This document shows positions 45,801 through 60,866 of a stretch of 64,000 nt of DNA, in pieces. The first letter of the stretch is position 1. Every line of letters begins with the position of its first letter. The stretch spans positions 62,001 through 126,000 of IMG/VR virus record IMGVR_UViG_3300023179_005186; one strand, given 5' to 3'. Position numbers and translations under genes: made by a program. The notes under the pieces were generated by a model. That model was not told the origin of the DNA. It searched no databases and saw only the letters and a list, made by a program, of their open reading frames with translations.

Positions 45801-48800
45801 AATTTCTTTAACAGATTTACTAAAAAGTTTAACAAATTCACTATAATCAACTATGTTTACAATAATTTTATATGGATTATAAATATTTAGAAGAAGTGAT
45901 TGATATTTAACATTAAGTGTATAAAAAAATTCATTAATAATATTTTTATCAGTAAATGAAATAATTGTTTTATCAATAATTTCATTTAAGACTGTTTCAT
46001 TATAATTTAAAGTAATACTTAATTTATATTCAATAATTTTAATAATTAATTGTATACTGATTTTAATTCTATAAATTAAATTTGTTAAATTTAATTTGTA
46101 TTCTAAATTAAAATTTTTAAATTTATTAATAGTATTAAAAAATATCACTAAATCATAATTAGATTTAGTTGGATTTATTTCAACAGAATCATATAATAGT
46201 ATATAATAATATAAATTAATTAAGTAATCATATAATTCATCATAATTAGTAAATGTACTATTTCTTAAAAAATAATTTTGTAAAATTAAATTTTTAGTAT
46301 TTGATACATTAAATTTATTAATTTGAAATTGAAAATTAAATTGTTTAAATAATTTTAAAATATAATTATAGTTATCAATATATTCAAGAGGATTTTTTGT
46401 ATTTAAACTATATAAATTTTTAGATAATATAGTATTTATTATTTGATAAAATATTTGTTTATATACTTCAATATTATTTTCTTTTATATTTATAATTGAT
46501 TCTGGATTATCAAGAATAATCTTATAATAATCAAATAATCTTTCATATATAACAACATAGTTTTTTTCAAAATTATAGTAATTATATTCAAAATTATAAT
46601 ATTTTTTAAATAATTGTAAATAAATTTTTTTAAAATTAATATTATTAGTTGATAAATCATAATCACAAGGAGTTATAATAGATAATTTATCTAAATTATA
46701 TGCTATATTTTCTAATGAATCAATATTAAAAAATCTAGTTAATATATTTTCATAAATATATTTTTCATTAATCTGATTTTTATAGCTTCCTAAATTATAT
46801 GATAATTGATAATTAGATGTTAATCCTTTAAAACCTTCAAGTATATCATTAACAAATCTTGCTCCAAGTCTTAAATTTCCAATAACGTTATTAACATCAT
46901 TATTTAAATTATTATATGTAATATTATAATATTTAAGTAATGAACATACTAAGTTAAATGAAATATTTATATTAGAAATATCTGTTTCTTTATAATTTTT
47001 AAGATTATTATCAATAAATTGTGATACAGTATAACTTGAATTATAATATATATTATTTAAATCATATATTGTATTCGATATTTTAATATCTAATAAATTA
47101 ATACTTTGTATAGTTAATTCATATTTATTTGGATTATTTATAGTTACATCATTATTATATACAATATTAATTCTTTTAATTAAATTAGAAACGGTTATAC
47201 CTTTAATTGGTTCAACTAATGTAGTTGTATAAATATCATCATTACCAATAATTAATTCATATGATTTAATATATTTTTGAACAAGTGTAATAAAATATTC
47301 ATCAATATTTACTGAATTTTTAACTAAATTTACAATATAAATAATATCATTATAATAACTTAAGCTAGAATCAATATCAATCTTAATTTGATTAACATTA
47401 TCATCATTAAAAGAATAAACAGAACTGATATAATAATATATGATTTTAAGATTTGATACACTCAGAATATCTTGTATAGCAAAATCTATTAATTCTGTTT
47501 CAATATCATACTCAAATTTTGTTTCAGGATTTATAGAAAAGTTTTCAATTAATAATATATGTATAAATGATAATACAAGATAATTATAGTATAAATAGAT
47601 AATAATCTTTTTTTTAATATTATCTGTTAATATAGATATAAAACAATCTGCTTGATTATTTTTTTTTAATTCAACAATAGAATTATATATATCATTTGGA
47701 GCAAAATTTTCACTTAGAACAGTTATATTAAATATTAATTGATATAATTCATTCAAATTTGCAACATCATTAAAATAATTAATAACTGGAATATCATTGT
47801 CTAATTTAAATAAAAGAATTTCTTCGAAATTTTTAATACAATAGTTTCTAAATGTATTATAATAATAATAAAATGAGTTTGTTTTAGTATAGTCAACATC
47901 TAATTTACTAATCATAACATTAATCCATTTATTTTGTAAAAAAGCATTATAATCAGACCAATTTTGATAATTAAACATTTGAAAAACATCAATATCTTCA
48001 TAAAGTGCTGTATTTGATCTATATTCTTTATAAAAAGTTTTTTCTACAGTTTGCTTAGATTCATAAATTTTAACTATATCATAAAGTGTTTGTGTTTTAA
48101 AATAATTAATAGTTTCTTGTAAATTTTTTGATTTAGAAATAGCATAATTAGTTGCAAAAATATATAAAATTCTATTCATATTTTTTTCAAAATTAATAGA
48201 ATTTAGAATATTAATATTAATATAATTACAAATTAATTGTATAAGATTATCAGTCGAATAAAGTGGATTGATATTATTAATATTTAAAACTAAATTATTT
48301 AATTTAGTTTTTTTACTTATAATACCACATTTTTGAAAGAATATTGTATAAAAATAATTGGATAGATCTCCTTCATAAAAATATTTAACAGTATTTAATA
48401 GATTATTTATAATTCTTGATTTAAAATTATCAAATATACTAATGGTACTATAAGCAATTTTTAAATTATTATAAATGTTATTTTCAATATTATAATTAGT
48501 TTCGTTATATAAAATATTTAAAATATCTATGTATTCTTCTTGTAATGATGTTTCAGATAAATTATCAACGGAAACAGTTTTACCATTTATACCTCCATTT
48601 AAAATTGAATATAATATTTTATTATATTGATAGATAAAGTTGTTTAAATTATTATTAAATTTATGAAAAAAAGTAGGAAAGGAAGATATACTATAATTAT
48701 TATTTAATACATTTATAAAACTAAATTTATTAATTAAATCAAATAATGTTTTATTATTTGATTCAGTTATTTTAATATCAGTTGATTGCATATATCTTAA

Positions 48801-51800
48801 ATAATCCTGTTTATAGTCTATAATTTTATTTTTATTAGATAAAGTTTCTTCAATATAAATAGTATTATAATCAAGATTAATTAATATTCCAGAGTTAGAT
48901 AAAATTATAATTATTTCATTTACAGATTTAGTATATATGTTGGTAGAGTATTTTTTAGTAATATAAATATCAAAATTGTTATCATTAGAAAAATTTTGTG
49001 AATTAATAAAAGTATTCACATCTGAAGATAAACAATTATAAATAAAACTCATATACAATAATAAAATACAAATTATGTTATTTTTAGTAAAGGATGTATT
49101 AACAAAGTAGTATTTTGAATCAATTAAATTAATATTTGTATTATTAGTTTGATTAAATATTACTATTTGATTAATTATAATATTAAGACATTGATTAAAA
49201 ATAATTTCGTTGACACTATAATACAATAAATATGTAAAATTTTCATAAATATATATATTAATATTATTTACAAATTGTATATAGTATTTATATGCAATAA
49301 TATTGTAACTTAGTAATAAATTATTATATTGAGAATATATATATTGAAACACATCGGTTATATTAGAATTATCTAGATAATTTACAAATTGTTTTATATC
49401 ATTTGATTTATTACCATAAAAATTATTAATTTGATTAAAATTATTGTATACAATAGTTAAATTAAATGTTTTATTAATTGTATTTAAGTTATCCAAGTTA
49501 ATATTATCAAAAATAGTACCAATTGCAAAAATAGAATAATAACAATTATAATAAAATTTATTTGTATTTAAATTTTCAAAATTTACTACAATTTGTTCTG
49601 ATAAAAATACTTTTTTAATATCTTCTACAATTATTTCATATTGTAAATTTTCTTTTTTAAAAAAATTATTAACTAAATTATAAATTAGATCATAATTAAT
49701 AAATTTTAATTTATTTAATTCCATTATTTTTAAAAATTCAATTATTATAAAATCATCATAATTATATCTGAAATCATTTATAAAATTATTAATCTTATCA
49801 AAATTTTTTTGATCAATTAATATATCTTTACTTATTGCATTAGCTATTTTTTTAAAATAGAAAGATTGATATAAAAATATCAATGATTTACTTGAATCAT
49901 TTGGATTAATACTTAGTAAATAATTAAAATATAAATCTGAAAATAAATTTATTTGATCAAAACATAAAAAATTATTAATTAAATTAAATTTATTATCTAA
50001 AATAGGAGATACATCAAGATTAATTGTATTAATTTGATCAATGATTGAATTATTTATATTATTAAAAAATTTAATAAATGAAATTATAAATTTAAAAGCT
50101 AGATCTCTAAGTGTAATAAAATCTTCAGGTATTTTATTTTTAAATGATATGTCTAAACTCATATTAGCAAAATATGTATATAAGAAATATATTCTATAAA
50201 TAGGTGAATTTATAAAAATAAAATTTAAAAATATATTTGGTTCATTAAAATTAGTTTTTATGTATGTACATTCTTTAGTAATAGGGTCATGTATCTTTTT
50301 AAAATATTTAAAATTAGAGAAAGAATTATTATAAAGATAGTTATCTGTATAATTAAATAAATTTTCCATAATAAATGTATTTATTGAAAATGGAATATTA
50401 ATATTTGGTAATAACAAATTAAAATTAATTTGTGTTAGTTCATATAAATAATTCTTTATTAATTCATTATTATATTTATTTTCAACTTTTACAACATTAT
50501 TATAATATTCATCAATTACATTATTAAAATTATTAATATTCAAATAGTCATTAATATATTGATCAATATCTAAAGTATTATTAAAGTTACATTTAAACAA
50601 ATTAAAATCAAAATTAATATTATTTTTTATATTTTTTATTAGATTACTATAAAAAATATCTTTTGACTTGTTAAATATTGTTACAGATTTTAATATACTA
50701 ACATCCAGTGTTGGACAAGGATCAACAAGTGATTCTGAATACATAAAAATATTACTTGAATATGGAAATATTGCAGAAGCATAGTCCATGTTATAAAATA
50801 AGTTTGTTAGAATACCATTTGGTTGATAAATATCAAATGAATTTTTTATATAAATATTTGCAATTACATTAATTGATTCTGATATTATTAATAGTAATGA
50901 ATTTTGAAATAAATTCTGAATGTATATTAAATTTTCATTGATTGGATTACTTATTAGTAAATCATTATTTACATTTATAACAAAATTAAATAAGTTATTA
51001 TTATATATGTAGTTTGTTACATAAGATTTTCTTACAACTGAAAAATTATCTTCAATAAAATTATTTTTTGTTAAATTTACAAGTTGTGATAATAATGCAT
51101 CAAAAGAATTATATGTTTGATTATATCTAGAAGTAAATTTATCTAATACATTATAATATAGATAAGCACTTATTATAATACTTTGATAAACAGATATCTG
51201 TCTATTTGCAAAAGGAATAGTTGTATTCTTTAATACAAAATTATTTTTAACATTATTCTGATATAAAATCTTCTTAAATAAATTTTTAGATAATATTAAA
51301 ACATTTGGATTAATTAATATATCAAGAATTTTATTGTTAAAAATACCTTGACCTAAAGAATCTATTTTTTTAAGAAAATTAAAATCTTTATTATTAATAA
51401 TTTTTATATATTCTTGAATGGATATATTACTATTACAAATTAATGTAATTAATAATCTAATATATAGATCTGTTGGTAAATTTGTATTATATAAATTAGA
51501 AATATTAATTATTTGTGTTTCATCACTTATTAAATATTCATTAAAATCATTATTAGTTAAATTACCAAAAAATGGTGTATCTTTTAATATAAATAAAATC
51601 ATTTGAGTTCTTTCAACATTACTTATAATGTCATAATATGTAATATAATTTTTATCAATATTAGAAACTATTTTTAGTATTTTATTAAAAGCATTATCAG
51701 TCAAAATATATTTTTTACTTTTAATTTTATTATCAATTATTTCCAAATTAATTTGATTAATACTACTAAAAAGAAATACTATAAATTGGTTATAAAATGT

Positions 51801-52610
51801 ATTAAGATCATTCAAATTATTATAGAAAAGAGAAATATATAATGTATTTTTATCAATTTTAATTTTACCAAATATTGTAAAATTATAATTATTAATAATT
51901 AAATTAAATAATTCTAAATATTTTTCTTGATCTTCTTTTAAAAATTTTATTCTAAATGAAGATTTAAAATTTTCTAAATCTATCCTTATGTAATCTAAAT
52001 TATTAAAATCAATTTGATTAAATAAATATAATATTAAAGTATTTGAAGTTATAGGTTCATCAGAATACATATTATATCCATAAAAATTATAATACTGATT
52101 AATATTATAAAAAATATTATTTTTATCAGTTTCTAATACACAATTATAAGTATATTTAAAGATTTCTGAAGGTTCTGATTCAATTTTAAAATAAGTATTC
52201 ATAATAGTAAGATAATTAATATCATCATTAATAAAGTTAACTTTTGAAATACTTACTATTTTTATTAAATTTTCATTAAAAAAATTAATTTTTATACTAT
52301 ATGAATTATATTGATTTAATATATTATTAAATAATGTACAGTACAATGAAGGATATTGTTTTAGTAGTTCTGTATAATTTTCATCATATGCTATTTTTAA
52401 ATATGATTTTGATAAAAAATCACCACTTTTAGGAATATTAAAACTTAATAATGAATTATCTTTCAAGTAATTACCTCCAATTTCATAATTATTAATAAAA
52501 AAATTAGTGTGTCTTCTATAGTATATTTTAAAGAAGGTTATTTGAGGTTCTTTATTAAAAATATTATATTCATATCCAGGTGTAATTAATTGAATAAAGC
52601 CAACTCCCAT
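42879..52610 (-). CDS. Giant capsid-protein paralog (3243 aa) with ~2800-aa insertion
   Basis: MCP N-terminus (PQITFFK..YRRHTNF, SGDFLSK) and C-terminus (YSFALEPEDFQPTGAIN, YNILRYQSG) flank a long N/I/Y/F-rich insert. Confidence 0.88.
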   Translation of the reverse strand: MGVGFIQLITPGYEYNIFNKEPQITFFKIYYRRHTNFFINNYEIGGNYLKDNSLLSFNIPKSGDFLSKSYLKIAYDENYTELLKQYPSLYCTLFNNILNQYNSYSIKINFFNENLIKIVSISKVNFINDDINYLTIMNTYFKIESEPSEIFKYTYNCVLETDKNNIFYNINQYYNFYGYNMYSDEPITSNTLILYLFNQIDFNNLDYIRIDLENFKSSFRIKFLKEDQEKYLELFNLIINNYNFTIFGKIKIDKNTLYISLFYNNLNDLNTFYNQFIVFLFSSINQINLEIIDNKIKSKKYILTDNAFNKILKIVSNIDKNYITYYDIISNVERTQMILFILKDTPFFGNLTNNDFNEYLISDETQIINISNLYNTNLPTDLYIRLLITLICNSNISIQEYIKIINNKDFNFLKKIDSLGQGIFNNKILDILINPNVLILSKNLFKKILYQNNVKNNFVLKNTTIPFANRQISVYQSIIISAYLYYNVLDKFTSRYNQTYNSFDALLSQLVNLTKNNFIEDNFSVVRKSYVTNYIYNNNLFNFVINVNNDLLISNPINENLIYIQNLFQNSLLLIISESINVIANIYIKNSFDIYQPNGILTNLFYNMDYASAIFPYSSNIFMYSESLVDPCPTLDVSILKSVTIFNKSKDIFYSNLIKNIKNNINFDFNLFKCNFNNTLDIDQYINDYLNINNFNNVIDEYYNNVVKVENKYNNELIKNYLYELTQINFNLLLPNINIPFSINTFIMENLFNYTDNYLYNNSFSNFKYFKKIHDPITKECTYIKTNFNEPNIFLNFIFINSPIYRIYFLYTYFANMSLDISFKNKIPEDFITLRDLAFKFIISFIKFFNNINNSIIDQINTINLDVSPILDNKFNLINNFLCFDQINLFSDLYFNYLLSINPNDSSKSLIFLYQSFYFKKIANAISKDILIDQKNFDKINNFINDFRYNYDDFIIIEFLKIMELNKLKFINYDLIYNLVNNFFKKENLQYEIIVEDIKKVFLSEQIVVNFENLNTNKFYYNCYYSIFAIGTIFDNINLDNLNTINKTFNLTIVYNNFNQINNFYGNKSNDIKQFVNYLDNSNITDVFQYIYSQYNNLLLSYNIIAYKYYIQFVNNINIYIYENFTYLLYYSVNEIIFNQCLNIIINQIVIFNQTNNTNINLIDSKYYFVNTSFTKNNIICILLLYMSFIYNCLSSDVNTFINSQNFSNDNNFDIYITKKYSTNIYTKSVNEIIIILSNSGILINLDYNTIYIEETLSNKNKIIDYKQDYLRYMQSTDIKITESNNKTLFDLINKFSFINVLNNNYSISSFPTFFHKFNNNLNNFIYQYNKILYSILNGGINGKTVSVDNLSETSLQEEYIDILNILYNETNYNIENNIYNNLKIAYSTISIFDNFKSRIINNLLNTVKYFYEGDLSNYFYTIFFQKCGIISKKTKLNNLVLNINNINPLYSTDNLIQLICNYININILNSINFEKNMNRILYIFATNYAISKSKNLQETINYFKTQTLYDIVKIYESKQTVEKTFYKEYRSNTALYEDIDVFQMFNYQNWSDYNAFLQNKWINVMISKLDVDYTKTNSFYYYYNTFRNYCIKNFEEILLFKLDNDIPVINYFNDVANLNELYQLIFNITVLSENFAPNDIYNSIVELKKNNQADCFISILTDNIKKKIIIYLYYNYLVLSFIHILLIENFSINPETKFEYDIETELIDFAIQDILSVSNLKIIYYYISSVYSFNDDNVNQIKIDIDSSLSYYNDIIYIVNLVKNSVNIDEYFITLVQKYIKSYELIIGNDDIYTTTLVEPIKGITVSNLIKRINIVYNNDVTINNPNKYELTIQSINLLDIKISNTIYDLNNIYYNSSYTVSQFIDNNLKNYKETDISNINISFNLVCSLLKYYNITYNNLNNDVNNVIGNLRLGARFVNDILEGFKGLTSNYQLSYNLGSYKNQINEKYIYENILTRFFNIDSLENIAYNLDKLSIITPCDYDLSTNNINFKKIYLQLFKKYYNFEYNYYNFEKNYVVIYERLFDYYKIILDNPESIINIKENNIEVYKQIFYQIINTILSKNLYSLNTKNPLEYIDNYNYILKLFKQFNFQFQINKFNVSNTKNLILQNYFLRNSTFTNYDELYDYLINLYYYILLYDSVEINPTKSNYDLVIFFNTINKFKNFNLEYKLNLTNLIYRIKISIQLIIKIIEYKLSITLNYNETVLNEIIDKTIISFTDKNIINEFFYTLNVKYQSLLLNIYNPYKIIVNIVDYSEFVKLFSKSVKEIIYYINDYSIEYNLELIWKKYWENIIFKYYDFANNNFELKDFILNFNNFTSIIFQYFDFLNEDITNKLFNKYVDLYSNYFLYLFRVFQNNTYVDIDFKTIYQLIFEQEFNYIGTRIEESIYFTETLFNVLKKTLWGILYHNSFDKRLNKFLDSQIIFYSFYFSYTSFVNLDLNISFEGSNYDYTTFINNIPKLQILYRIMSTTIINRYINIEDYYNIFNNILLSCNTFIYFGKLIITLDISSSPATFLDFINKNFIKKNIINNFYKTIQDDTIKDITKYKINTFIEQENNLDDFSIQIYNNYTNELQIFEENSISSTIINNTINGLINNYSSQVNKFYSINNKPILYTTTVIKNILQNIKQNLDTFKNILGGYSNKFDNIYLSTSNIITLFNGKSFVFDENIITIFTLIYNGIDSLNNNDLIIILFYYNCYLTWLSTYGNRYTNDLDNIIYTFANLINTNIIKYMEFISLTDTNIEDDLEFIQVNKFFNGLNNILFNVYDNLNFILICQEFFSNIVINNLYVNENIINDSVLFNIKTFNGQISVNTPNNIKLLNSYLKSKETNFYIKNNKTNVWKYLLGVCVDFNECEVIKQMKSIYEFNSLLNITNDYMNYIKEINGGYINELGIIKIFEYFHLNFDDQQIDFLNKQMYKIFINLNVNLNIYQAIVEMLGINTLGDNESYLTTGLTNWIVHMGNKNFYIPLNFFFQGISNAIPLIACMYTNIKIDALFSSKNIFKDSIAINYLIPFNVSSALNMDFIFVERDERKIICEKAIDNLIETHGNYIRTLDFDYFVNQFDDTITLQFDFDINSLVKEIIWELTFFLNYNKITPNNYKKINEKSYNIYDFILNTKFYLDGARRDGVNNLSSNNYNGITTILNQYKYNTRAKVNTNLNVYSFALEPEDFQPTGAINLTTTRIFSIQIIMDKKGLLNYFGNTKTLFDLGKFSAQINLTTIQYNILRYQSGLSGLLFISNN

Positions 52611-52664: not shown

Positions 52665-52780
52665 TAATATGTATAGGATAAGGCTCCAATTCCTAATATG
52701 TATAGGATAAGGCTCCAATTCCTAATATGTATAGGATAAGGCTCCAATTCCTAATATGTATAGGATAATGCTCCAATTCC
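52665..52780. repeat. 29-bp tandem repeat x4 duplicating the capsid gene 3' end
   Basis: TAATATGTATAGGATAAGGCTCCAATTCC at 52665, 52694 and 52723; the coding copy at 52752 differs by one base. Confidence 0.96.
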
Positions 52781-54748
52781 TCCAATTAATCTCAATACAT
52801 TAAAATTAGTAACCTGTACAACTAACTTATAATTAATATCATTATTATTAATTAACTTATTTTCCTGAAAATTATTAATTATACTATAATTAAATTTGTT
52901 TGTATTCGCTGTTTCACTTAAGAATATATCACTAACTTTAACTTTTAATATAAAACTAGGAATTCTACTTAAATTAATACTTCCTGAAGGTTGTGTTTCT
53001 GTTGGATTAAGTGCAAATGAATAACAATATAAACCTTTTTGTGGACTAGAATTATAACATTTAAATGGCATAAGATAATTAAAGAAATTTGAATTATCAC
53101 CAATTAATACTGTACTATTTAAATATAAATATGATTCTTCGATTATATTATAACTATCAATTAAATTTGTATATTTATTAAAAAGATTATCATTTATATA
53201 TGCATAATAATTTTTTGTAAGTAAATTTGTATTAATAAGTTCTTTTCCTATAATAAATTGTGTTGGATTAAAGTTTTTTTCATTATCAAATAATATTTTT
53301 AAATATTCAATAAAATAATTTTCTTCATTAGTTGTTGAATCAGTGTTATTTAATATAGAATATGTAAAACCTTGATTATTAGTAAATATATCACGAATAT
53401 TATTATTTTTAACAACAGACCAATACATATCTTTACAACAGTGAAAAAAATCAAGATCAAAAGAATTATTATATCTATTAAGATTATCAAATTCTATTTG
53501 TTGAACCTGAGTAATTAAATATTCATGACCTGATTGAGCAAATTTTTTCCTTTCAATACTATCTAAATAAATATATTCTGCCAGCATAGTAATCTCTAAT
53601 TTATTTTTCATTATTTCATTATTATTTTCAATTAAATAATTTAGAATATCATTTTCTACTTTCTCATTATTATAGTCTTTATCGATATTAATTTTAATAC
53701 ATTCATGAAATTTTTTTAAATTAATTTTTACTTGAATTGTATTAAATTGTAAAGCAATTAAAGGAAATGATAATCCATAATTTCCATTAAACCATAATGG
53801 TATGGGTAGATATAAATAATTATTATCCTTTGTTAAACTAAATAAATTAATTTCTTGATTTGCACCAATTAAATCATTATATAATTCAGGATTTTTATAA
53901 AAAAGATCTCCATAATTATTAATATAATAATCACTAAGAGAATTTATTTTATTACTACCTATATAAAAGTCAATTGAATTAAATAAATAGATCCCTATTT
54001 TATCAACCCAACTAAAATTTATTATATCATTAGTTACAATAATATCTTTTAATCTATTATACAAATCTTTATTTAGTTGTTCAATTATATCTAAATTTTT
54101 ATAAATAGCAAATTTAAATAATTCATAACTCATTTGTTCTTCAGTCCAATTCTCGTATATATAAACTAAAGTATTATTAATATCCTTAAATAATGAGGCA
54201 TTTGTAAACAAAGTTATATTTATATTACTTATATTAGTTAAAAGACCATTATTATAAAAATAATTAATTACTGTAAAGTATTGTTGATACTGATCCGAAT
54301 TAATATTACTTAAAATAAATAATGATAAATCATTGATATAAGTAAGACTTGTTATATTATCATATTTTTCAAAAAATAAGTTGATTACATTTAGTAAGTT
54401 ATTATAAAATTGTATAAAATAATCATAATATAAAATATATGTAAAATTATCTAATATATTTGGTAAAATATTTTTACTTATTATATCTTTATTTAAATTT
54501 GAAAAATCTATTTTAGGAAGCTTTATTCTTAATGTTAATCTTGATAATAAATCACCAGAATTTTTTGGTATTGTTAACACTGCTGTTTCTCCAAATTCTA
54601 CATTATTATCAAATGATAATTGATTTACTCTTTTACCAAAATTTGTATATCTTCTATATATTATATTAAAAAATGTTATTTCTGGGTTTGCAGTTAACAT
54701 TATATCTTGATTACCATATGAAATTACTTGAACCAGACCACCAGCCAT
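52751..54748 (-). CDS. Major capsid protein paralog (double jelly-roll)
   Basis: MAGGLVQVISYG..PEITFF..YRRYTNF, SGDLLSR, SFALNP..QPSGSINLSRI and NFNVLRLIGGIG. Confidence 0.93.
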   Translation of the reverse strand: MAGGLVQVISYGNQDIMLTANPEITFFNIIYRRYTNFGKRVNQLSFDNNVEFGETAVLTIPKNSGDLLSRLTLRIKLPKIDFSNLNKDIISKNILPNILDNFTYILYYDYFIQFYNNLLNVINLFFEKYDNITSLTYINDLSLFILSNINSDQYQQYFTVINYFYNNGLLTNISNINITLFTNASLFKDINNTLVYIYENWTEEQMSYELFKFAIYKNLDIIEQLNKDLYNRLKDIIVTNDIINFSWVDKIGIYLFNSIDFYIGSNKINSLSDYYINNYGDLFYKNPELYNDLIGANQEINLFSLTKDNNYLYLPIPLWFNGNYGLSFPLIALQFNTIQVKINLKKFHECIKINIDKDYNNEKVENDILNYLIENNNEIMKNKLEITMLAEYIYLDSIERKKFAQSGHEYLITQVQQIEFDNLNRYNNSFDLDFFHCCKDMYWSVVKNNNIRDIFTNNQGFTYSILNNTDSTTNEENYFIEYLKILFDNEKNFNPTQFIIGKELINTNLLTKNYYAYINDNLFNKYTNLIDSYNIIEESYLYLNSTVLIGDNSNFFNYLMPFKCYNSSPQKGLYCYSFALNPTETQPSGSINLSRIPSFILKVKVSDIFLSETANTNKFNYSIINNFQENKLINNNDINYKLVVQVTNFNVLRLIGGIGALSYTY

Positions 54749-54803: not shown

Positions 54804-57443
54804 ATGGAAAATTTAGATGAAGAAAATACTTTTAACTTTGATAACATTTGTTTAGGTATAGATTTTGGTACTACTAATTCTTGTTTAAGTATTTGGTATA
54901 AAAATAAATCATGGATTGTTCCAGATATTGATGGTATTAATATTATACCTACTGTTATTGAAATAAATTCAGATAAAAAAATAATAGGTAAAGAAGCATA
55001 TTTGCGAAAAGATATTTTTGAAAAAACTAATGATATTAATATTAAAAATACTTTTCTTGTTTATGAAATTAAAAAATTATTAGGTAAAAAATTTTCAGAA
55101 TTAGATAAAAATTTTATTGATATTGTAGCATATGATATAAAATCAGATGAAGAAGATAATATTATTATTCAAGATAATAATTCTGGTAAATTATATTATC
55201 CAGAAGAAATTGCTATACATATATTTATGAGTTTTAAAGTTAGAGCTGAAAATTATTTTTCTGAAAAGTTTAATCATAATATAAAAATATCAAATGTTAT
55301 ACTAACTGTTCCTGCTTATTTTAATAAAAATCAACGTCAAATAATTAAAAATTCAGCTCAAAATGCTGATCTTAATGTAATTAGATTAATTAACGAACCA
55401 ACTGCTGCTGCAATTTGTTATGGATTAGGTAAAAATTTAGATCTAATCAATGAATCATTAGGTATAAATGTTATTATATTTGATTTTGGAGGTGGAACAC
55501 TGGATGTTAGTTTATTAAACATAAATAATGGAGTATATGAAGTATTGGGATCTTGTGGAAATAATAATCTAGGTGGATCAGATTTTGATAGAAAAATTAT
55601 GGAATTCTGTATTACTAATTTTATTGAAAAAAATAAATTAAATTCAAATGAATTTATTGATAAAGTTGAGGAAAATTCTTTACAAAAATTAAAATATTTA
55701 TGTGAACAAGCAAAAATAACATTAACTGATAATATAAATACCATTATAAAAATCACTAATTTTTATAATAAAATTGATATGATACAAACTTTTAATCGTG
55801 AAGATTTTGAATTAATTACTCAAGATTTAATTAGATTAATTATTAAACCTATTAATGATGTATTAGATAATTGTGAATTAGAAAAATCAGATATTAAAGA
55901 AATAATTATGGTTGGTGGTATGACAAGAATACCTATTATTAGATATAATATTGAAAGATATTTTAATCGTGATGTTAATTGTTCTATTGATCCAGATATA
56001 GTTGTTTCAATAGGTGCTGCTATTCATGGTCATATGTTACTTAATAAAACATCAATTGAAGATAAATTATTATTAATAGATAGAACTTCACTTTCTATCG
56101 GATTAGAAACTTCTGGTGGTATCATGGACACTTTAATTCCAAGAGGTACAATTATTCCTATTAAAAAAATAAAAAAATATACAACTGATACTGATTATGT
56201 AGAATCAATTGATATAAAAATATATGAAGGTGAACGAAAATTTACAAAAGATAATTTTTTAATTGGTAGTTTTACTTTAAGTGGAATAGAAAAACAAAAG
56301 AGAGGAATTCCTGAAATTCAGATTACTTTTGAAATAGATTCTGATGGTATTATAAAAATCAAAGCAGAAGATTTAGATAATCCTCTTAATAAAAAATCTA
56401 TTTTAGTATCAGGAAATAAACAAAATTTATCTGAAGAACAAATTGAAAAAATTATTATAAATGCAAAACAAATGGATCAAATTGATCGTATTGATAAAAT
56501 GAAAAAAGAATCATATTTATCATTAATTGATTCAAGTAAAAAAATTATAGAAAATTTAAATTCAAGTGATTTACAAATACCTTCAGAAACTAAAGATGAT
56601 ATAATTAATAATGTTGAAGAAATATTAAATTGGTTGGAATCAAATAATTATTTAGAAATAGAAACAGAAAAATATAAAGAGTTATTACATGATTATAAAA
56701 TGAATTATTCTATATATTTAATACAACAAACTAATCATTTAATAAATTTAGAATCTGCAAATGATAATGATAATAAGGGTATAGAAATTTATGAAGATGA
56801 TAATAATAGTAGAAAATATTTTGAACAAATTAAATATTTTAGAAGTATTGTTGATGAATATGATGATATTAAGAAACAAATTAATATTTATAAATATCTA
56901 GATTTAACATCTAATAATGATACTGAATTAATTATTAATAATATTGAAAATAATTTTAAAGAAGTTTATGACTATGCTAATGATATATTAATTAAATTTT
57001 TTATTGAAAAAAATATTAATGATGAAATAGTAGATAATTATGTTACAAATTTATATCAATTAGATATTAAATTTAAAGAATATTTTGATTTATTCAATGA
57101 ACAATTTAATTTAGTTAATAAACTTATTCAAAAAATAAATGAAAAAGAAGAGTATTTATTAAAACAATTAGAACAAAATATTGAAATATCTGAACCAAAT
57201 ATTGAATTAAATAAAAATATATCATATGGTACAGATCTTTTAGATATTATAAATAATACAGAAACTAATTCAAATAAAATAGTTGATGAAACAAATAATA
57301 AAATTAATGCTATTAATTCTAAATTAGAAATAATTTTAGAATTTCAAGCTATAATTTATAAAATTAATTCAGGATATATTAAAGTTGATTTAAATAAAAT
57401 TAATAATATGATTGATGTATTAGATAAAATTATAGATACCTAG
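54804..57443 (+). CDS. hsp70: Hsp70 (DnaK-like) chaperone with long helical C-terminal extension
   Basis: GIDFGTTNS, TVPAYFN, INEPTAAA, FDFGGGTLDVS, LGGSDFD and VGGMTRIP motifs. Confidence 0.96.
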   Translation: MENLDEENTFNFDNICLGIDFGTTNSCLSIWYKNKSWIVPDIDGINIIPTVIEINSDKKIIGKEAYLRKDIFEKTNDINIKNTFLVYEIKKLLGKKFSELDKNFIDIVAYDIKSDEEDNIIIQDNNSGKLYYPEEIAIHIFMSFKVRAENYFSEKFNHNIKISNVILTVPAYFNKNQRQIIKNSAQNADLNVIRLINEPTAAAICYGLGKNLDLINESLGINVIIFDFGGGTLDVSLLNINNGVYEVLGSCGNNNLGGSDFDRKIMEFCITNFIEKNKLNSNEFIDKVEENSLQKLKYLCEQAKITLTDNINTIIKITNFYNKIDMIQTFNREDFELITQDLIRLIIKPINDVLDNCELEKSDIKEIIMVGGMTRIPIIRYNIERYFNRDVNCSIDPDIVVSIGAAIHGHMLLNKTSIEDKLLLIDRTSLSIGLETSGGIMDTLIPRGTIIPIKKIKKYTTDTDYVESIDIKIYEGERKFTKDNFLIGSFTLSGIEKQKRGIPEIQITFEIDSDGIIKIKAEDLDNPLNKKSILVSGNKQNLSEEQIEKIIINAKQMDQIDRIDKMKKESYLSLIDSSKKIIENLNSSDLQIPSETKDDIINNVEEILNWLESNNYLEIETEKYKELLHDYKMNYSIYLIQQTNHLINLESANDNDNKGIEIYEDDNNSRKYFEQIKYFRSIVDEYDDIKKQINIYKYLDLTSNNDTELIINNIENNFKEVYDYANDILIKFFIEKNINDEIVDNYVTNLYQLDIKFKEYFDLFNEQFNLVNKLIQKINEKEEYLLKQLEQNIEISEPNIELNKNISYGTDLLDIINNTETNSNKIVDETNNKINAINSKLEIILEFQAIIYKINSGYIKVDLNKINNMIDVLDKIIDT

Positions 57444-57877
57444 TCTATACTCTTATCAATATTATTTATATAAAAATTAAATAATTCAAATACTTGAACC
57501 TTTGGTAAAATTGCTATATCTATATTAGTTTTTTTACATACATAATAAGTTGATTCTATTACATTAACATCAATGTATTTTATCAAAAATTGAATACATA
57601 TAATTAAACTAATCATTATATCATCAGAAAATATAGTTATTTTTTCATTTTTATTATAAGATTCTAATATAAAATTATTAATTTTTTCAAAATTTATTTT
57701 TTCAGTATGTAACTTATCTTTTAAATATATTTTATTCAAATCTAGTTCTAAATTTAATATATTCAATTTATCATTTTTAAATGATTTATTTATATTAATA
57801 ATATTTCCTGTTATATTCGAATCTGTAGATGATCCAATGCATAGTCCAGGAATTATTTCTTTTGAATTATTAATCAT
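57440..57877 (-). CDS. Dual-specificity-phosphatase-fold protein lacking the catalytic loop
   Basis: EIIPGLCIGS start and F..INNFI..KITIF..FLIKY..ES..VCKK match the DSP topology, but HCxxGxxR is absent. Confidence 0.55.
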   Translation of the reverse strand: MINNSKEIIPGLCIGSSTDSNITGNIININKSFKNDKLNILNLELDLNKIYLKDKLHTEKINFEKINNFILESYNKNEKITIFSDDIMISLIICIQFLIKYIDVNVIESTYYVCKKTNIDIAILPKVQVFELFNFYINNIDKSID

Positions 57878-57932: not shown

Positions 57933-59084
57933 ATGACAAATTTTAAAAAAAAATATATCAAGTATAAATTAAAATATCTTAAATTAATTGGAGGTGTTAT
58001 AGAAGATGCACTTATTGCTAATTTAAGGCCATATGAAACTGAAAAAAATTCTGGTACAGTTGATAATATGACTAATCAATGTTTATGGATTTCTATTTGT
58101 GATTATATTAAACGATTTAATATTGAATTAACCGTTAGAGAACTTAGAAATTTATTAATTGGTCATAAAATTGAAATTAATAATGAAAGAGAAATGGCAG
58201 ATAATGGACGTCATCAATTAGAGGAAGCATTTAAACTGATTGGTGAGATATTTAATTTAAAAATTAAAATTTTTCCAATTGCTTATGAATATAATAATAA
58301 AAAATATATTAATAAAGAGTCGGTTAGTGTATATGGTGATCAGAATTCAAATAAAGTTATTAATATCGCTTCAGGAGGAATAACATTTGGTAATCATTTT
58401 GAATTAATTACGGAAATATTTGATAAACCAATACCGCCTGAAGAATATAATAATTTTAGAGATTCTATAGAAAAAAATACAATAAATCAAAATGAAGTTG
58501 AATTAACATTTCAACCCAATGAAAAAAAACCTATGGGATTTGATTTAAATGATAAAAATTTAGTTATAATAGGAGTTACAGATCAAGGACATGCATTTAA
58601 AAAAGGTATGCAAATAGGGGATCAAATTATTCAATATAATTATGAGAATGTTAATAATTATAAAGAATATTTGAAAATAGAAGGAAGAATTAATCCAAAT
58701 GATCCTATTGTATTAACAATAAAAAAAAAAGATAATGTAAAAAAAAAATCTTATGTGAATTTAGATGATGAAATATGTGAACAAGATCTTATGAATTCAA
58801 ATTTGAAAACAAAAGAACAAGAATCTATGGAAAATGATAATTATCAAATAACATTTAATTCAGATGAACAAAAGCCTATGATGGGATTTTCATATAATCC
58901 TAATAATTTAGTTATAATGGAAGCTTCAGGAAAAGCATATAATAAAGGTATGCGAGTTGGAGATCAAATTATTGAATTCAACAATATACCTGTTAATAAT
59001 CATCAAGAATATATAGATATTAAAGATAATTTGTATGATACAAATCAAATTATTACATTAAGATTAAAACGATTTGAAAATTAA
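57933..59084 (+). CDS. KYxKYK-leader, OTU-like cysteine protease domain plus two PDZ domains
   Basis: NQCLWISI...ELR...GNHFELI (OTU-like); GMQIGDQIIQYN and GMRVGDQIIEFNNIPV (PDZ). Confidence 0.7.
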   Translation: MTNFKKKYIKYKLKYLKLIGGVIEDALIANLRPYETEKNSGTVDNMTNQCLWISICDYIKRFNIELTVRELRNLLIGHKIEINNEREMADNGRHQLEEAFKLIGEIFNLKIKIFPIAYEYNNKKYINKESVSVYGDQNSNKVINIASGGITFGNHFELITEIFDKPIPPEEYNNFRDSIEKNTINQNEVELTFQPNEKKPMGFDLNDKNLVIIGVTDQGHAFKKGMQIGDQIIQYNYENVNNYKEYLKIEGRINPNDPIVLTIKKKDNVKKKSYVNLDDEICEQDLMNSNLKTKEQESMENDNYQITFNSDEQKPMMGFSYNPNNLVIMEASGKAYNKGMRVGDQIIEFNNIPVNNHQEYIDIKDNLYDTNQIITLRLKRFEN

Positions 59085-59375: not shown

Positions 59376-60866
59376 TTAAAGTTTTAATAATTTAAATATT
59401 TGTGCATTATCTTTTGCACTATTAACATTATATGAATTACCCATACTACTACCAGTTGCTGTAGTACCTGTTGCTGTAGTACCTGTTGCTGTAGTACCAG
59501 TACCTGTACCTGTAATTAATCCTGATGATATCTCAATATTTTTAATTTTAGGAAATTGTTTATTTTTAAGTTTATAACTAGTAATTGTATCATTAATTGT
59601 ATCATCAATTTCTTTATAGCCATTATCAGAATCATCAGATAAATTTATTTCTGCTAAATTTTGGTCAGAAAATAAATCAAGAAAATTACTAATAGGAGCG
59701 CCATTTTTATTTTTAATATTATATTTTTTAATTATACTTTCAGAATTTGATTTTAAAGATTCATTTTCTTTAGTAGAACTATTTAATGATATATCAGATT
59801 TATTTTCATTATTCTTAACATTTAATTTATTTGATTCATTAACTTTAAATGAATCATTTAATTTATTAACATTTAATTTATCAGTTAGATTATTTTCATT
59901 TGAATTTTTACAATTTAATGAAAGATATTGATTCATATTGAATAATTGATCATTAAGATCATCTTTAATATTTGTAAGATTATTTAATAACATTTGATTA
60001 TATTCACATGAACTTTGAATTTGTAAAATATTTTTAAGAATTAATGTACTAAATCTATATACAAAACCAGAATATATTTTACTAATTTTTATATTTGTTT
60101 CAGAATCTTCAAAAACAGAAATATTTTTAAATAACCATATTATTAATTGATAGTAAAATATTATTAATAAATTTTTATAATTTTCAGCTTCTTCTGCATC
60201 TATTGATTCAAAATTACCTATAGTTTCATAAATAAAATTTTGTAATTTTGTCATACAGTCTAAACTTGAAGTAAAAACAGAATTTACAAAATTAAATTCA
60301 TTAACACCTAAATTAGGATTTACACTAATTATAAAAATATATTTCTTAATACATAATTTCCCTTCTACTGAATTTAATATATATTTTAATAAATCATTAA
60401 AATTAAATGAACAATCCAATTCATTATTTTCATATATGTTAAACATATCTAATTCTTGATTATATTCAACTTTGTGTAATAGTTTATCTCCAAAAACTTC
60501 TTGTATTAAATTTCCACCTTCTATATTATATGTATTTGTTGTGTTAGGATATATACTTTTTTCTTTTTTCTCTAAAATATTACTAATATTATTTTTATAT
60601 TTTTCCGGAGTATTTACTTCAACTTCTTCTTTATTTGATTCTAATTTAAATAAAGGTTTAGATGCACCTTGTTGTACTATATTATTATTTTCTTTATGAT
60701 CTACTTTTTCAGATTTATCATAATCATGTTTACTATTATCATGTTTAGAACTATCATTCTTTGAATAATGACCAGATTCTTCATATTTAGAACTATCGTA
60801 TTTATTTTGATCAGGACTATCAAAATCATTTGAATATTTTTTTTTTATTGGTTTTGTATTTAACAT
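59376..60866 (-). CDS. Hypothetical protein
   Basis: 496 aa; low-complexity ends including (TTATG)x3. Confidence 0.75.
   Translation of the reverse strand: MLNTKPIKKKYSNDFDSPDQNKYDSSKYEESGHYSKNDSSKHDNSKHDYDKSEKVDHKENNNIVQQGASKPLFKLESNKEEVEVNTPEKYKNNISNILEKKEKSIYPNTTNTYNIEGGNLIQEVFGDKLLHKVEYNQELDMFNIYENNELDCSFNFNDLLKYILNSVEGKLCIKKYIFIISVNPNLGVNEFNFVNSVFTSSLDCMTKLQNFIYETIGNFESIDAEEAENYKNLLIIFYYQLIIWLFKNISVFEDSETNIKISKIYSGFVYRFSTLILKNILQIQSSCEYNQMLLNNLTNIKDDLNDQLFNMNQYLSLNCKNSNENNLTDKLNVNKLNDSFKVNESNKLNVKNNENKSDISLNSSTKENESLKSNSESIIKKYNIKNKNGAPISNFLDLFSDQNLAEINLSDDSDNGYKEIDDTINDTITSYKLKNKQFPKIKNIEISSGLITGTGTGTTATGTTATGTTATGSSMGNSYNVNSAKDNAQIFKLLKL

What the first reader, a model, noticed from the sequence alone, without database searches (positions are those of the whole stretch)
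57933..59084. Viral OTU-like deubiquitinase fused to tandem PDZ domains
Seen: a Cys motif (TNQCLWISI, cf. OTU DGNCLFRA), a His motif (GNHFE, cf. NHY[D/N]), and two ~78-aa repeats with PDZ signatures (MGF carboxylate-binding loop, GM.(I/V)GDQII..N..V). PDZ domains are unusual in viruses, which normally carry PDZ-binding motifs instead. An OTU-PDZ-PDZ protein could select host substrates by their C-termini for deubiquitination. I do not recall this architecture being described.
Basis: partly seen in the sequence, partly recalled or inferred. Interest (0 to 1): 0.72.

Follow-up and report, generated by a model that had tools for sequence, protein, structure and literature searches.

The report
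Giant-virus OTU-like peptidase with PDZ domains
A giant virus from lake water encodes a protein that joins a very divergent OTU-type cysteine peptidase, probably a ubiquitin-removing enzyme, to two or three PDZ peptide-binding domains; this combination is rare and I found no description of it, but its activity is only predicted.

Summary
Window 57933..59084 (+) is an intact 383-aa ORF in a 316-kb, 20% GC giant-virus contig, beside the NCLDV major capsid protein and Hsp70 genes.

- **OTU domain (aa ~30-165).** Pfam finds nothing here. An alignment-based AlphaFold model (pLDDT 89) matches only OTU deubiquitinases. The top 30 of 48,161 PDB chains are all OTUs, with Z up to 9.2-9.5.
- **Catalytic residues.** C50 and H155 are invariant in 115 relatives. 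The H-F-E triplet fits the OTU threading C...H-aromatic-D/N/E.
- **PDZ domains.** Two PDZ domains pass Pfam cut-offs. They are most like the tandem PDZs of bacterial proteases.
- **Family.** It has 138 clusters from giant-virus metagenomes. Its usual layout is N-terminal leader, OTU, then coiled coil. Only 2 clusters carry PDZ.

Caveats:
- A 99.9% identical assembly has three PDZ domains, so the window copy may be a collapsed repeat.
- The PDZ-bearing clade lacks a family-conserved aromatic residue, possibly the Gly-Gly clamp.
- Activity is untested.

Residues 1-21 are a basic Tyr/Lys-rich helix ending in Gly-Gly. This leader heads many unrelated giant-virus proteins, and I found no description of it.

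Verdict: a new variant of a known kind, of moderate interest.

The parts
57933..59084 (+). Complete ORF, 383 aa (stop codon 59082-59084): leader, OTU-like domain, PDZ1, linker, PDZ2
   Evidence: The identical protein occurs on contigs from two JGI samples. A metatranscriptome holds 72% of its sampled words.
57933..57995 (+). N-terminal leader, aa 1-21: basic Tyr/Lys-rich amphipathic helix (K-Y-x-K-Y-K-x-K-Y-L-x-L) ending in Gly20-Gly21
   Evidence: Present in 94 of 141 family proteins, 83 of them with GG. Also heads unrelated proteins in this genome and in many giant-virus contigs. Modelled as part of helix 4-29.
58020..58427 (+). OTU-fold cysteine peptidase core, aa ~30-165
   Evidence: AF2 with 115-sequence alignment: pLDDT 89.1, pTM 0.80. 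Foldseek PDB, Swiss-Prot and BFVD top hits are all OTU. VIA-align Z 9.5, 110 aa at 3.3 A, model range 30-163. In the Foldseek-independent search the top 30 of 48,161 chains are all OTU. Family profile versus PDB sequences: wMelOTU E 0.008.
58074..58082 (+). Cys-loop end and predicted nucleophile: N48-Q49-C50
   Evidence: C50 115/115, Q49 102/115, N48 97/115. The profile alignment places this Cys on the Cys of wMelOTU.
58395..58403 (+). Predicted general base and third triad residue: H155-F156-E157 (H-aromatic-D/N/E)
   Evidence: H155 115/115, F156 114/115, E157 83 plus Q 20 plus N 3 of 115. Aligned on H-F-E of wMelOTU and H-F-D of Farallon virus vOTU. OTU triad threading as defined in PMC7396840.
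58197..58202 (+). A89-D90: the family has F/Y/W at position 89 in 92% of members; this protein has Ala
   Evidence: Equivalence to the OTU Gly-Gly-clamping Trp is inferred from motif spacing only.
58488..58736 (+). PDZ domain 1, aa 186-268 (carboxylate-binding loop P-M-G-F at aa 200-203)
   Evidence: Pfam PDZ 191-263 and PDZ_2 203-271. PDZ profile versus PDB: site-2 protease tandem PDZ 3e-9, DegP 7e-9.
58737..58841 (+). Charged low-complexity linker between the PDZ domains, aa 269-303
   Evidence: Read from the sequence; no family hit.
58842..59075 (+). PDZ domain 2, aa 304-381 (loop M-M-G-F)
   Evidence: Pfam PDZ_6 333-380; 43% identical to PDZ1. The stretch from about 58831 to 59029 aligns to two places in the sibling assembly L009, so it includes the unit duplicated there.

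Best explanation
The gene encodes a multidomain protein of a nucleocytoplasmic large DNA virus, probably Mimiviridae-like. It has a short N-terminal basic helix ending in Gly-Gly, a highly divergent OTU-fold cysteine peptidase with triad C50/H155/E157, and two PDZ domains (three in a sibling assembly).

The most likely mechanism is a thiol isopeptidase acting after a Gly-Gly tail, that is, removal of ubiquitin or a ubiquitin-like modifier. The PDZ domains would replace the coiled-coil tail of the rest of the family as the targeting module. They would bind free C-termini (or other PDZ ligands) of host or viral proteins and so bring particular substrates or sites to the catalytic domain.

Shown here: the ORF, the OTU fold, invariant Cys/His in the OTU threading, PDZ domain identity, the rarity of the fusion, and its giant-virus setting. 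Inferred: catalytic activity, ubiquitin as the substrate, and PDZ-mediated targeting.
For: OTU fold: model pLDDT 89. All top hits are OTU DUBs in four libraries and in a Foldseek-independent scan of 48,161 chains, where ranks 1-30 are OTU and the first non-OTU is staphopain at Z 5.0. Family profile versus PDB sequences: three of four hits are OTU, with the His motif aligned. Invariant C50 and H155, H-F-[EQN], and R/K at position 72 in 100% of members fit the OTU signature described in PMC7396840. Link to ubiquitin in the family: two relatives (P0140 and L124:3565-4587) insert a RanBP2/NZF-type zinc finger with a T-F...M signature between leader and OTU, as in TRABID (the signature and TRABID comparison are from my own knowledge). 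PDZ: Pfam above cut-off, profile hits to solved PDZ domains down to 3e-9, and language-model neighbours that are PDZ clusters. The fusion is conserved in a second, 42% identical protein from another lake (P0005). Context: NCLDV capsid and Hsp70 neighbours; relatives lie on GVMAG contigs and in Tupanvirus and Klosneuvirinae proteomes. RNA-derived contigs hold 72% of the gene's words.
Against: There is no biochemical evidence. The Pfam OTU model does not match this protein, any of the 115 aligned domains, or the contig. TM-scores to solved OTUs are only about 0.4-0.5, and Z 9 is just above the tool's stated background of 7-8. The query, P0005 and P0060 have Ala/Ile/Ala where 92% of the family has an aromatic residue. 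If that residue is the Gly-Gly clamp, whose mutation abolishes activity in wMelOTU (PMC7396840), ubiquitin cleavage could be weak or the specificity changed. No ubiquitin gene was found on this partial contig, although that search also failed in all control genomes and so is uninformative. The PDZ ligand is unknown. The Cys-His distance could not be measured.
Confidence: 0.55

Rival explanations
1. It is a processing (leader) peptidase rather than a deubiquitinase. The OTU-like domain would cleave after the Gly-Gly that ends the shared N-terminal leader of many giant-virus proteins, possibly including its own. The PDZ domains would hold substrates or the newly made C-termini.
For: The leader ends in x-[QL]-x-G-G. 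From my own knowledge, this resembles the ubiquitin tail and the L-x-G-G or G-G-x sites of viral papain-like, OTU-like and adenain/ASFV-type proteases. The leader heads at least 50 unrelated proteins in giant-virus contigs and two other proteins in this genome. Viral OTU-fold proteases that act as both polyprotein processors and DUBs are among the fold matches (TYMV PRO/DUB, arterivirus PLP2).
Against: Cleavage of the leader has not been shown anywhere. The leader is also carried by proteins of viruses in which this family was not looked for. NCLDVs have other candidate Gly-Gly proteases (Ulp1-like; my own knowledge). In the model the Gly-Gly lies inside a helix (aa 4-29), not in an extended substrate-like conformation. 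In members with a 120-aa spacer the leader is far from the OTU core.
Confidence: 0.15
2. The PDZ domains are regulators rather than targeting modules. As in HtrA/DegS or site-2 proteases, they would gate or allosterically switch the peptidase when they bind exposed C-termini.
For: The best sequence matches of the PDZ profile are the tandem PDZs of the Aquifex site-2 protease (3e-9) and DegP/DegQ (7e-9), ahead of scaffold PDZs such as syntenin (4e-6). The protease-plus-tandem-PDZ layout is the same.
Against: The catalytic domain is unrelated to S1C or M50 proteases. PDZ1 and PDZ2 are recent duplicates of each other (43% identity, copy number 2-3), not an inherited DegP-like pair. No interface could be modelled.
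Confidence: 0.12
3. It is an inactive or re-purposed OTU: a ubiquitin- or peptide-binding scaffold, or an enzyme with a different chemistry or tail specificity.
For: The family-conserved aromatic at position 89 is lost in exactly the small clade that carries PDZ domains. The protein has a unique 4-residue insertion (S-G-G-I... at aa 148-151) just before the His motif. The Pfam OTU model does not match.
Against: Cys, His, the residue at His+2, the N-Q-C loop and the basic residue 72 are all retained under evident constraint. Pseudo-enzymes usually lose the nucleophile.
Confidence: 0.1
4. The two-PDZ architecture is an assembly artefact: a collapsed repeat of a gene that really has three PDZ domains.
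For: The sibling assembly (99.9% nt identity) has an extra 234-nt unit. Its PDZ2 and PDZ3 share a 137-nt exact run, longer than usual assembler k-mers. The unique middle part is absent from the whole contig.
Against: The two-PDZ form was assembled independently in two JGI samples. P0005 from another lake also has two PDZ domains. Either way the OTU-PDZ fusion stands.
Confidence: 0.35

Closest known systems
OTU deubiquitinases (MEROPS C85, Pfam PF02338): wMelOTU of Wolbachia (6W9O/6W9R), yeast Otu2 / human OTUD6B, OTUD2, OTUD3, nairovirus vOTUs
   Same: Predicted fold (Z 8-9.5 over about 110 residues, model aa 30-163). Triad threading C...H-aromatic-E. A conserved basic residue after the Cys helix. 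A minimal, pared-down OTU core like wMelOTU. An N-terminal helix before the core, as in Otu2/OTUD6B.
   Different: No match to the Pfam OTU model. A longer Cys loop with an invariant N-x-G 9-11 residues before the Cys. Ala in place of the family's aromatic at position 89. C-terminal PDZ domains, which I have not seen reported for any OTU.
Uncharacterised ORFan proteins of Tupanvirus, Klosneuvirus, Terrestrivirus, Edafosvirus, Fadolivirus, Catovirus and Yasminevirus (BFVD hits), plus 138 metagenomic clusters
   Same: Same family: leader, Gly-Gly, OTU-like core with the N-Q-C-x-W-I-S and H-F-E-L-I motifs.
   Different: They end in coiled coils (a few have an NZF zinc finger or low-complexity spacers). 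Only this protein's cluster and P0005 end in PDZ domains.
TRABID/ZRANB1 and other OTUs with accessory binding domains (NZF, UIM, UBA, ankyrin)
   Same: The logic of an OTU core aimed by appended binding modules. Two relatives of this family even carry an NZF-type finger.
   Different: Here the appended module is PDZ, which recognises C-termini rather than ubiquitin.
HtrA/DegP/DegQ serine proteases and site-2 metalloproteases (RseP family) with tandem PDZ domains
   Same: A protease followed by, or carrying, two PDZ domains. The PDZ units here are most similar in sequence to these.
   Different: The catalytic domain is an unrelated papain-like OTU. The setting is viral and cytoplasmic, not bacterial periplasm or membrane. 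The PDZ pair arose by local duplication.
Double-glycine leaders cut by papain-like peptidases (bacteriocin leaders and C39 peptidases; adenain; ASFV pS273R; coronavirus PLpro L-x-G-G). Comparison from my own knowledge.
   Same: A short N-terminal leader ending in Gly-Gly on many unrelated proteins, together with a papain-like Cys peptidase family in the same viruses. A C39-like cluster appears as a weak fold neighbour (TM 0.41).
   Different: No evidence that the leader is cleaved. The leader sequence is unrelated to bacteriocin leaders.

Membership tests
OTU deubiquitinase family (clan CA, C85; PF02338) | OTU fold: central beta-sheet on a helical subdomain | tested here: met
   AF2 pLDDT 89. 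Top hits are exclusively OTU in PDB, Swiss-Prot and BFVD. Z 9.5. The top 30 of 48,161 chains are all OTU.
OTU deubiquitinase family (clan CA, C85; PF02338) | Catalytic triad threaded C...H-aromatic-D/N/E (PMC7396840) | tested here: met
   C50 and H155 invariant, F156 99%, E/Q/N157 92%. His motif aligned with H-F-E of wMelOTU and H-F-D of a vOTU.
OTU deubiquitinase family (clan CA, C85; PF02338) | Match to the curated sequence model (Pfam OTU) | tested here: not met
   No hit at E<=10 for the protein, at E<=1 for 115 relatives, or on the contig. Only the family profile reaches solved OTUs weakly (E 0.008).
OTU deubiquitinase family (clan CA, C85; PF02338) | Conserved aromatic residue that clamps the Gly-Gly of ubiquitin | tested here: inconclusive
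   The family has F/Y/W at position 89 in 92% of members; this protein has Ala and P0005 has Ile. Equivalence to Trp123 of wMelOTU rests on motif spacing only; no residue-level structural alignment was available.
OTU deubiquitinase family (clan CA, C85; PF02338) | Conserved basic residue supporting the Cys loop | tested here: inconclusive
   R72 is R/K in 115/115, but structural equivalence was not verified.
OTU deubiquitinase family (clan CA, C85; PF02338) | Cys and His side chains within catalytic distance | not testable with these tools
   Model coordinates are not exposed. Supported only indirectly, by alignments spanning both motifs.
OTU deubiquitinase family (clan CA, C85; PF02338) | Isopeptidase activity on ubiquitin or a Ubl | not testable with these tools
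   Needs biochemistry.
PDZ domain (PF00595 / PF17820 / PF13180) | Match to curated models above the gathering score, two copies | tested here: met
   PDZ_6 39.2 bits (cut-off 27), PDZ 38.6 (23.2), PDZ_2 34 (27); stretches 191-271 and 333-380. Profile A5 hits 86 solved PDZ sequences at E<=0.01.
PDZ domain (PF00595 / PF17820 / PF13180) | Carboxylate-binding loop x-hydrophobic-G-hydrophobic before strand B | tested here: met
   P-M-G-F (aa 200-203) and M-M-G-F in PDZ2. Gly and the flanking hydrophobic positions are conserved in all five aligned units. The loop definition is from my own knowledge.
PDZ domain (PF00595 / PF17820 / PF13180) | PDZ fold and peptide binding | not tested
The single-sequence model of the whole protein failed (pLDDT 30).
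HtrA / site-2 protease type protease-PDZ systems | S1C serine or M50 metalloprotease catalytic domain | tested here: not met
   The N-terminal domain is OTU-fold. Only the PDZ units resemble these systems.

The most novel reading that the evidence does not exclude
The leader (M, 2-5 residues, K-Y-L-K-Y-K-x-K-Y-L-x-L-K, 2-6 residues, G-G) is an undescribed N-terminal tag shared by dozens of functionally unrelated proteins of Mimiviridae-like viruses: thioredoxins, E2 enzyme, F-box, LRR and ankyrin proteins, kinase, phosphatases, OTUs. The divergent OTU-like family is the peptidase that removes it after Gly-Gly. In this protein the PDZ domains capture C-termini of substrates or products. That would amount to a virus-wide maturation or targeting system.
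Probability: 0.08. Interest if true: 0.8.

Novelty: new variant of a known kind. Interest (0 to 1): 0.5.

Why it matters
If active, this would be the first OTU-type enzyme aimed by PDZ domains, that is, by the C-terminal sequence of its targets rather than by ubiquitin-chain type. It would also be a case of a giant virus independently re-creating the bacterial protease-plus-tandem-PDZ design on a deubiquitinase scaffold. The work gives a fold and a likely activity to a family of about 140 clusters now labelled ORFan or uncharacterised in Tupanvirus, Klosneuvirinae and many metagenomic giant viruses. It also exposes a widespread N-terminal Gly-Gly leader whose role (targeting, oligomerisation or cleavage) can be tested directly.

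Tried and rejected
- Single-sequence AF2 of the whole protein gave pLDDT 30 and was useless; it also cost one of the two structure jobs, so the PDZ domains could not be modelled.
- Pfam on the N-terminal domain and on 115 relatives gave no OTU hit, only scattered weak hits (LisH_PAC1, DUF1803) that come from the leader helix.
- The word-indexed homology search found only 3 relatives. The PDZ half found nothing but itself, so the origin of the PDZ units is unresolved.
- The search for related loci with the 115-sequence alignment failed because no stretch was conserved enough; a 10-sequence alignment worked.
- hhalign of the family against one canonical leader-bearing OTU (L097) aligned only the leader. 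With the leader removed it gave a weak match of the C-terminal half (E 0.002, probability 14%).
- The Mimivirus early-promoter octamer AAAATTGA is not enriched in the window and is absent upstream of the gene.
- The ubiquitin Pfam search of the contig was uninformative because its controls failed.
- The capsid protein against PDB did not resolve the viral lineage.
- Literature searches for OTU plus PDZ, giant virus plus PDZ or OTU, and the leader strings found nothing relevant.
- Complex prediction was not tried because it is offered only for prokaryotic windows.
- I considered a C39-like or generic papain fold and rejected it: the first non-OTU chain is at rank 31.

Full report
**What is there.** Window 57933..59084 (+) is one uninterrupted ORF of 383 aa that starts at the first Met after an in-frame stop. 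The window is part of a single 315,722-bp contig with 20% GC, filed as a virus record. The neighbouring genes are an NCLDV major capsid protein (52751..54748, -) and an 879-aa Hsp70 (54804..57443, +). The gene therefore belongs to a giant virus. Near-identical DNA occurs in many lake and freshwater metagenomes, and a freshwater metatranscriptome holds 72% of the gene's sampled 31-mers.

**The C-terminal half.**
- Pfam finds two PDZ domains above its gathering scores (PDZ_6, PDZ and PDZ_2; aa 191-271 and 333-380).
- The two units (aa 186-268 and 304-381) are 43% identical to each other (E 1e-18).
- Each has an x-hydrophobic-Gly-hydrophobic loop (P-M-G-F and M-M-G-F) at the place of the carboxylate-binding loop.
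- A profile of five such units hits 86 solved PDZ sequences. The best are the tandem PDZ of the Aquifex site-2 protease (3e-9) and DegP/DegQ (7e-9), ahead of syntenin and other scaffold PDZs (compare).
- Language-model neighbours of this half are PDZ clusters.

**The N-terminal half.** Pfam finds nothing in aa 1-183. An exhaustive phmmer search found 138 cluster representatives. In an alignment of 115 of them, N39, G41, C50 and H155 are invariant, and W52, S54, G153, F156, L158 and I159 are nearly so.

AlphaFold2 with this alignment gave a confident model (pLDDT 89.1, pTM 0.80). The fold searches agree:
- Foldseek against PDB, Swiss-Prot models and viral models returns OTU deubiquitinases throughout.
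- VIA-align gives Z up to 9.5 (110 residues at 3.3 A, model residues 30-163) against the Wolbachia OTU wMelOTU, with OTUD2, Otu2, OTUD3 and nairovirus vOTUs close behind.
- A search that does not depend on Foldseek, over 48,161 chains, puts OTU enzymes at ranks 1-30. The first non-OTU is staphopain, another papain-like enzyme, at Z 5.0.
- The family profile also reaches wMelOTU (E 0.008) and a vOTU (E 0.069) by sequence. Three of its four hits are OTU, and the His motif lies on their H-F-E and H-F-D.

Schubert et al. define the usual OTU threading as C...H-aromatic-D/N/E, with a conserved basic residue under the Cys loop and a conserved aromatic residue holding the Gly-Gly of ubiquitin (PMC7396840). 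Here the triad pattern is met: C50, then H155-F156-E157, with E/Q/N at 157 in 92% of members. Position 72 is R/K in all members.

I conclude that aa ~30-165 is an OTU-fold cysteine peptidase of a lineage too divergent for the Pfam model.

**A caution on activity.** Position 89 is F/Y/W in 92% of the family, but it is Ala in this protein, Ile in P0005 and Ala in P0060. These three form one small clade in a tree, although its support is weak. By motif spacing, an aromatic about 8 residues before the A-L of the following helix may be the counterpart of the Gly-Gly-clamping Trp of canonical OTUs. That equivalence is my inference; no residue-level superposition was available. If it is right, the PDZ-bearing clade may have altered tail recognition.

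**The family and the fusion.** The family comes from giant viruses:
- The IMG/VR relatives lie on GVMAG contigs.
- The best viral fold matches are unnamed or ORFan proteins of Tupanvirus, Klosneuvirus, Terrestrivirus, Edafosvirus, Fadolivirus, Catovirus and Yasminevirus.

The usual layout is leader, Gly-Gly, OTU-like core, coiled coil. Two relatives insert a RanBP2/NZF-type zinc finger with a T-F...M signature before the core. From my own knowledge, that is the ubiquitin-binding signature of NZF fingers and recalls TRABID, so it ties the family to ubiquitin.

Only two of the 140 scanned proteins carry PDZ domains: this one and P0005. P0005 is 363 aa, 42% identical in the OTU part, and comes from another freshwater metagenome. 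The two are sisters in the tree, but with low support. The fusion is therefore real, conserved and rare. The gene is single-copy in the contig. I found no paper describing an OTU-PDZ protein.

**Two or three PDZ domains.** The same 90% cluster holds a 461-aa protein from a 524-kb contig of another data set. The DNA around it is 99.9% identical to the window and has the same gene order. That form has an extra 78-aa PDZ unit. Its PDZ2 and PDZ3 share 203 of 234 nt, including a 137-nt exact run, and the unique part of the middle unit is absent from the whole contig here. The window form could be a true deletion variant, since it was assembled in two JGI samples. It could also be a repeat collapse.

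**The leader.** Residues 1-21 form a Lys/Tyr-rich amphipathic helix ending in Gly-Gly, and 94 of 141 family proteins have it. It is not specific to the family.
- In this contig it also heads a histidine phosphatase and an unknown protein.
Nearly all are on giant-virus contigs.
- Of 135 matches, 80 have a Met within 8 residues upstream (null 43/382), and 74 have Gly-Gly within 30 residues downstream (null 22/382).
- The proteins behind the leader include thioredoxins, LRR, ankyrin and F-box proteins, an E2 enzyme, a RIO kinase, phosphatases, hydrolases and a canonical OTU.
- The residues before Gly-Gly are mostly [QL] at P4 and I/K/L at P3.
- No paper containing these strings was found.

Its role is unknown. 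It could be an oligomerisation or targeting helix, or a cleavable propeptide. In the model the Gly-Gly sits inside a helix.

**Mechanism.** Most likely (about 0.55) the protein is an active OTU-type thiol isopeptidase whose targeting module is PDZ rather than coiled coil, so that it acts on proteins recognised by their C-termini. The rivals are:
- a Gly-Gly leader-processing peptidase (about 0.15);
- PDZ domains acting as HtrA-like regulators (about 0.12);
- a re-purposed or inactive OTU (about 0.1).

Whether the window's two-PDZ count is an assembly collapse (about 0.35) is a separate question. It does not affect the fusion itself.

**Verdict.** This is a new variant of a known kind: a divergent giant-virus OTU family, here with a PDZ tail that I could not find described. 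Interest is moderate (0.5). The shared Gly-Gly leader is the most open lead.

Noticed in passing
window 57933-57995; also L012 (G000:C1:150938-151639), L013 (G000:C1:310107-311186), and loci L015-L134: An N-terminal leader (Met, 2-5 residues, K-Y-L-K-Y-K-x-K-Y-L-x-L-K, 2-6 residues, Gly-Gly) heads dozens of unrelated giant-virus proteins: thioredoxin, E2, F-box, LRR, ankyrin, RIO kinase, phosphatases, canonical OTU. It is strongly enriched at ORF starts and followed by Gly-Gly. No literature was found.
   Followed up: partly
L009:6001-7386 (sibling assembly), against window 58831-59029: A 99.9% identical 524-kb assembly encodes a 461-aa form with three PDZ domains. The window form lacks one 234-nt unit across a 137-nt exact repeat, which is either copy-number polymorphism or assembly collapse.
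   Followed up: partly
L014:90-1022 (-) = G000:C1:254192-255124, outside the window: A second gene of the same virus (310 aa) has PDZ-like units without any OTU domain (Pfam PDZ 8.3e-10). PDZ is therefore used more than once in this genome.
   Followed up: partly
P0140 and L124:3565-4587 (-): Relatives of the OTU-like family carry a RanBP2/NZF-type zinc finger (C-x2-C-T-F-x-N-x6-C-x-M-C) between the leader and the OTU core. This is a likely ubiquitin-binding module, as in TRABID.
   Followed up: partly
window 42879-52610 (-): A 3243-aa ORF with no Pfam hit at E<=0.001, lying in the most AT-rich part of the window (14-16% GC around 44-52 kb).
   Followed up: no
window 57440-57877 (-): A 145-aa ORF with no Pfam hit, divergent from the OTU-PDZ gene across a 55-bp AT-only spacer. 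Its 3' end overlaps the Hsp70 stop codon by 4 nt. It is conserved in the sibling assembly.
   Followed up: no
window 54804-57443 (+) and 52751-54748 (-): The viral Hsp70 has a C-terminal extension of about 250 aa beyond the Hsp70 model. The 665-aa capsid protein matches the two capsid models only from about aa 238 onwards. Its N-terminal ~90 aa match the N-termini of solved PBCV-1 and related capsid proteins.
   Followed up: no
window 59376-60866 (-): A 496-aa ORF with no Pfam hit. It is Asn/Lys-rich and has a short (T-G / T-A-T-G) peptide repeat near its C-terminus.
   Followed up: no
P0025, P0031, P0049, P0071: Some family members have a low-complexity repeat spacer of about 120 aa between the leader-Gly-Gly and the OTU core. 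The leader is therefore a separable module.
   Followed up: no
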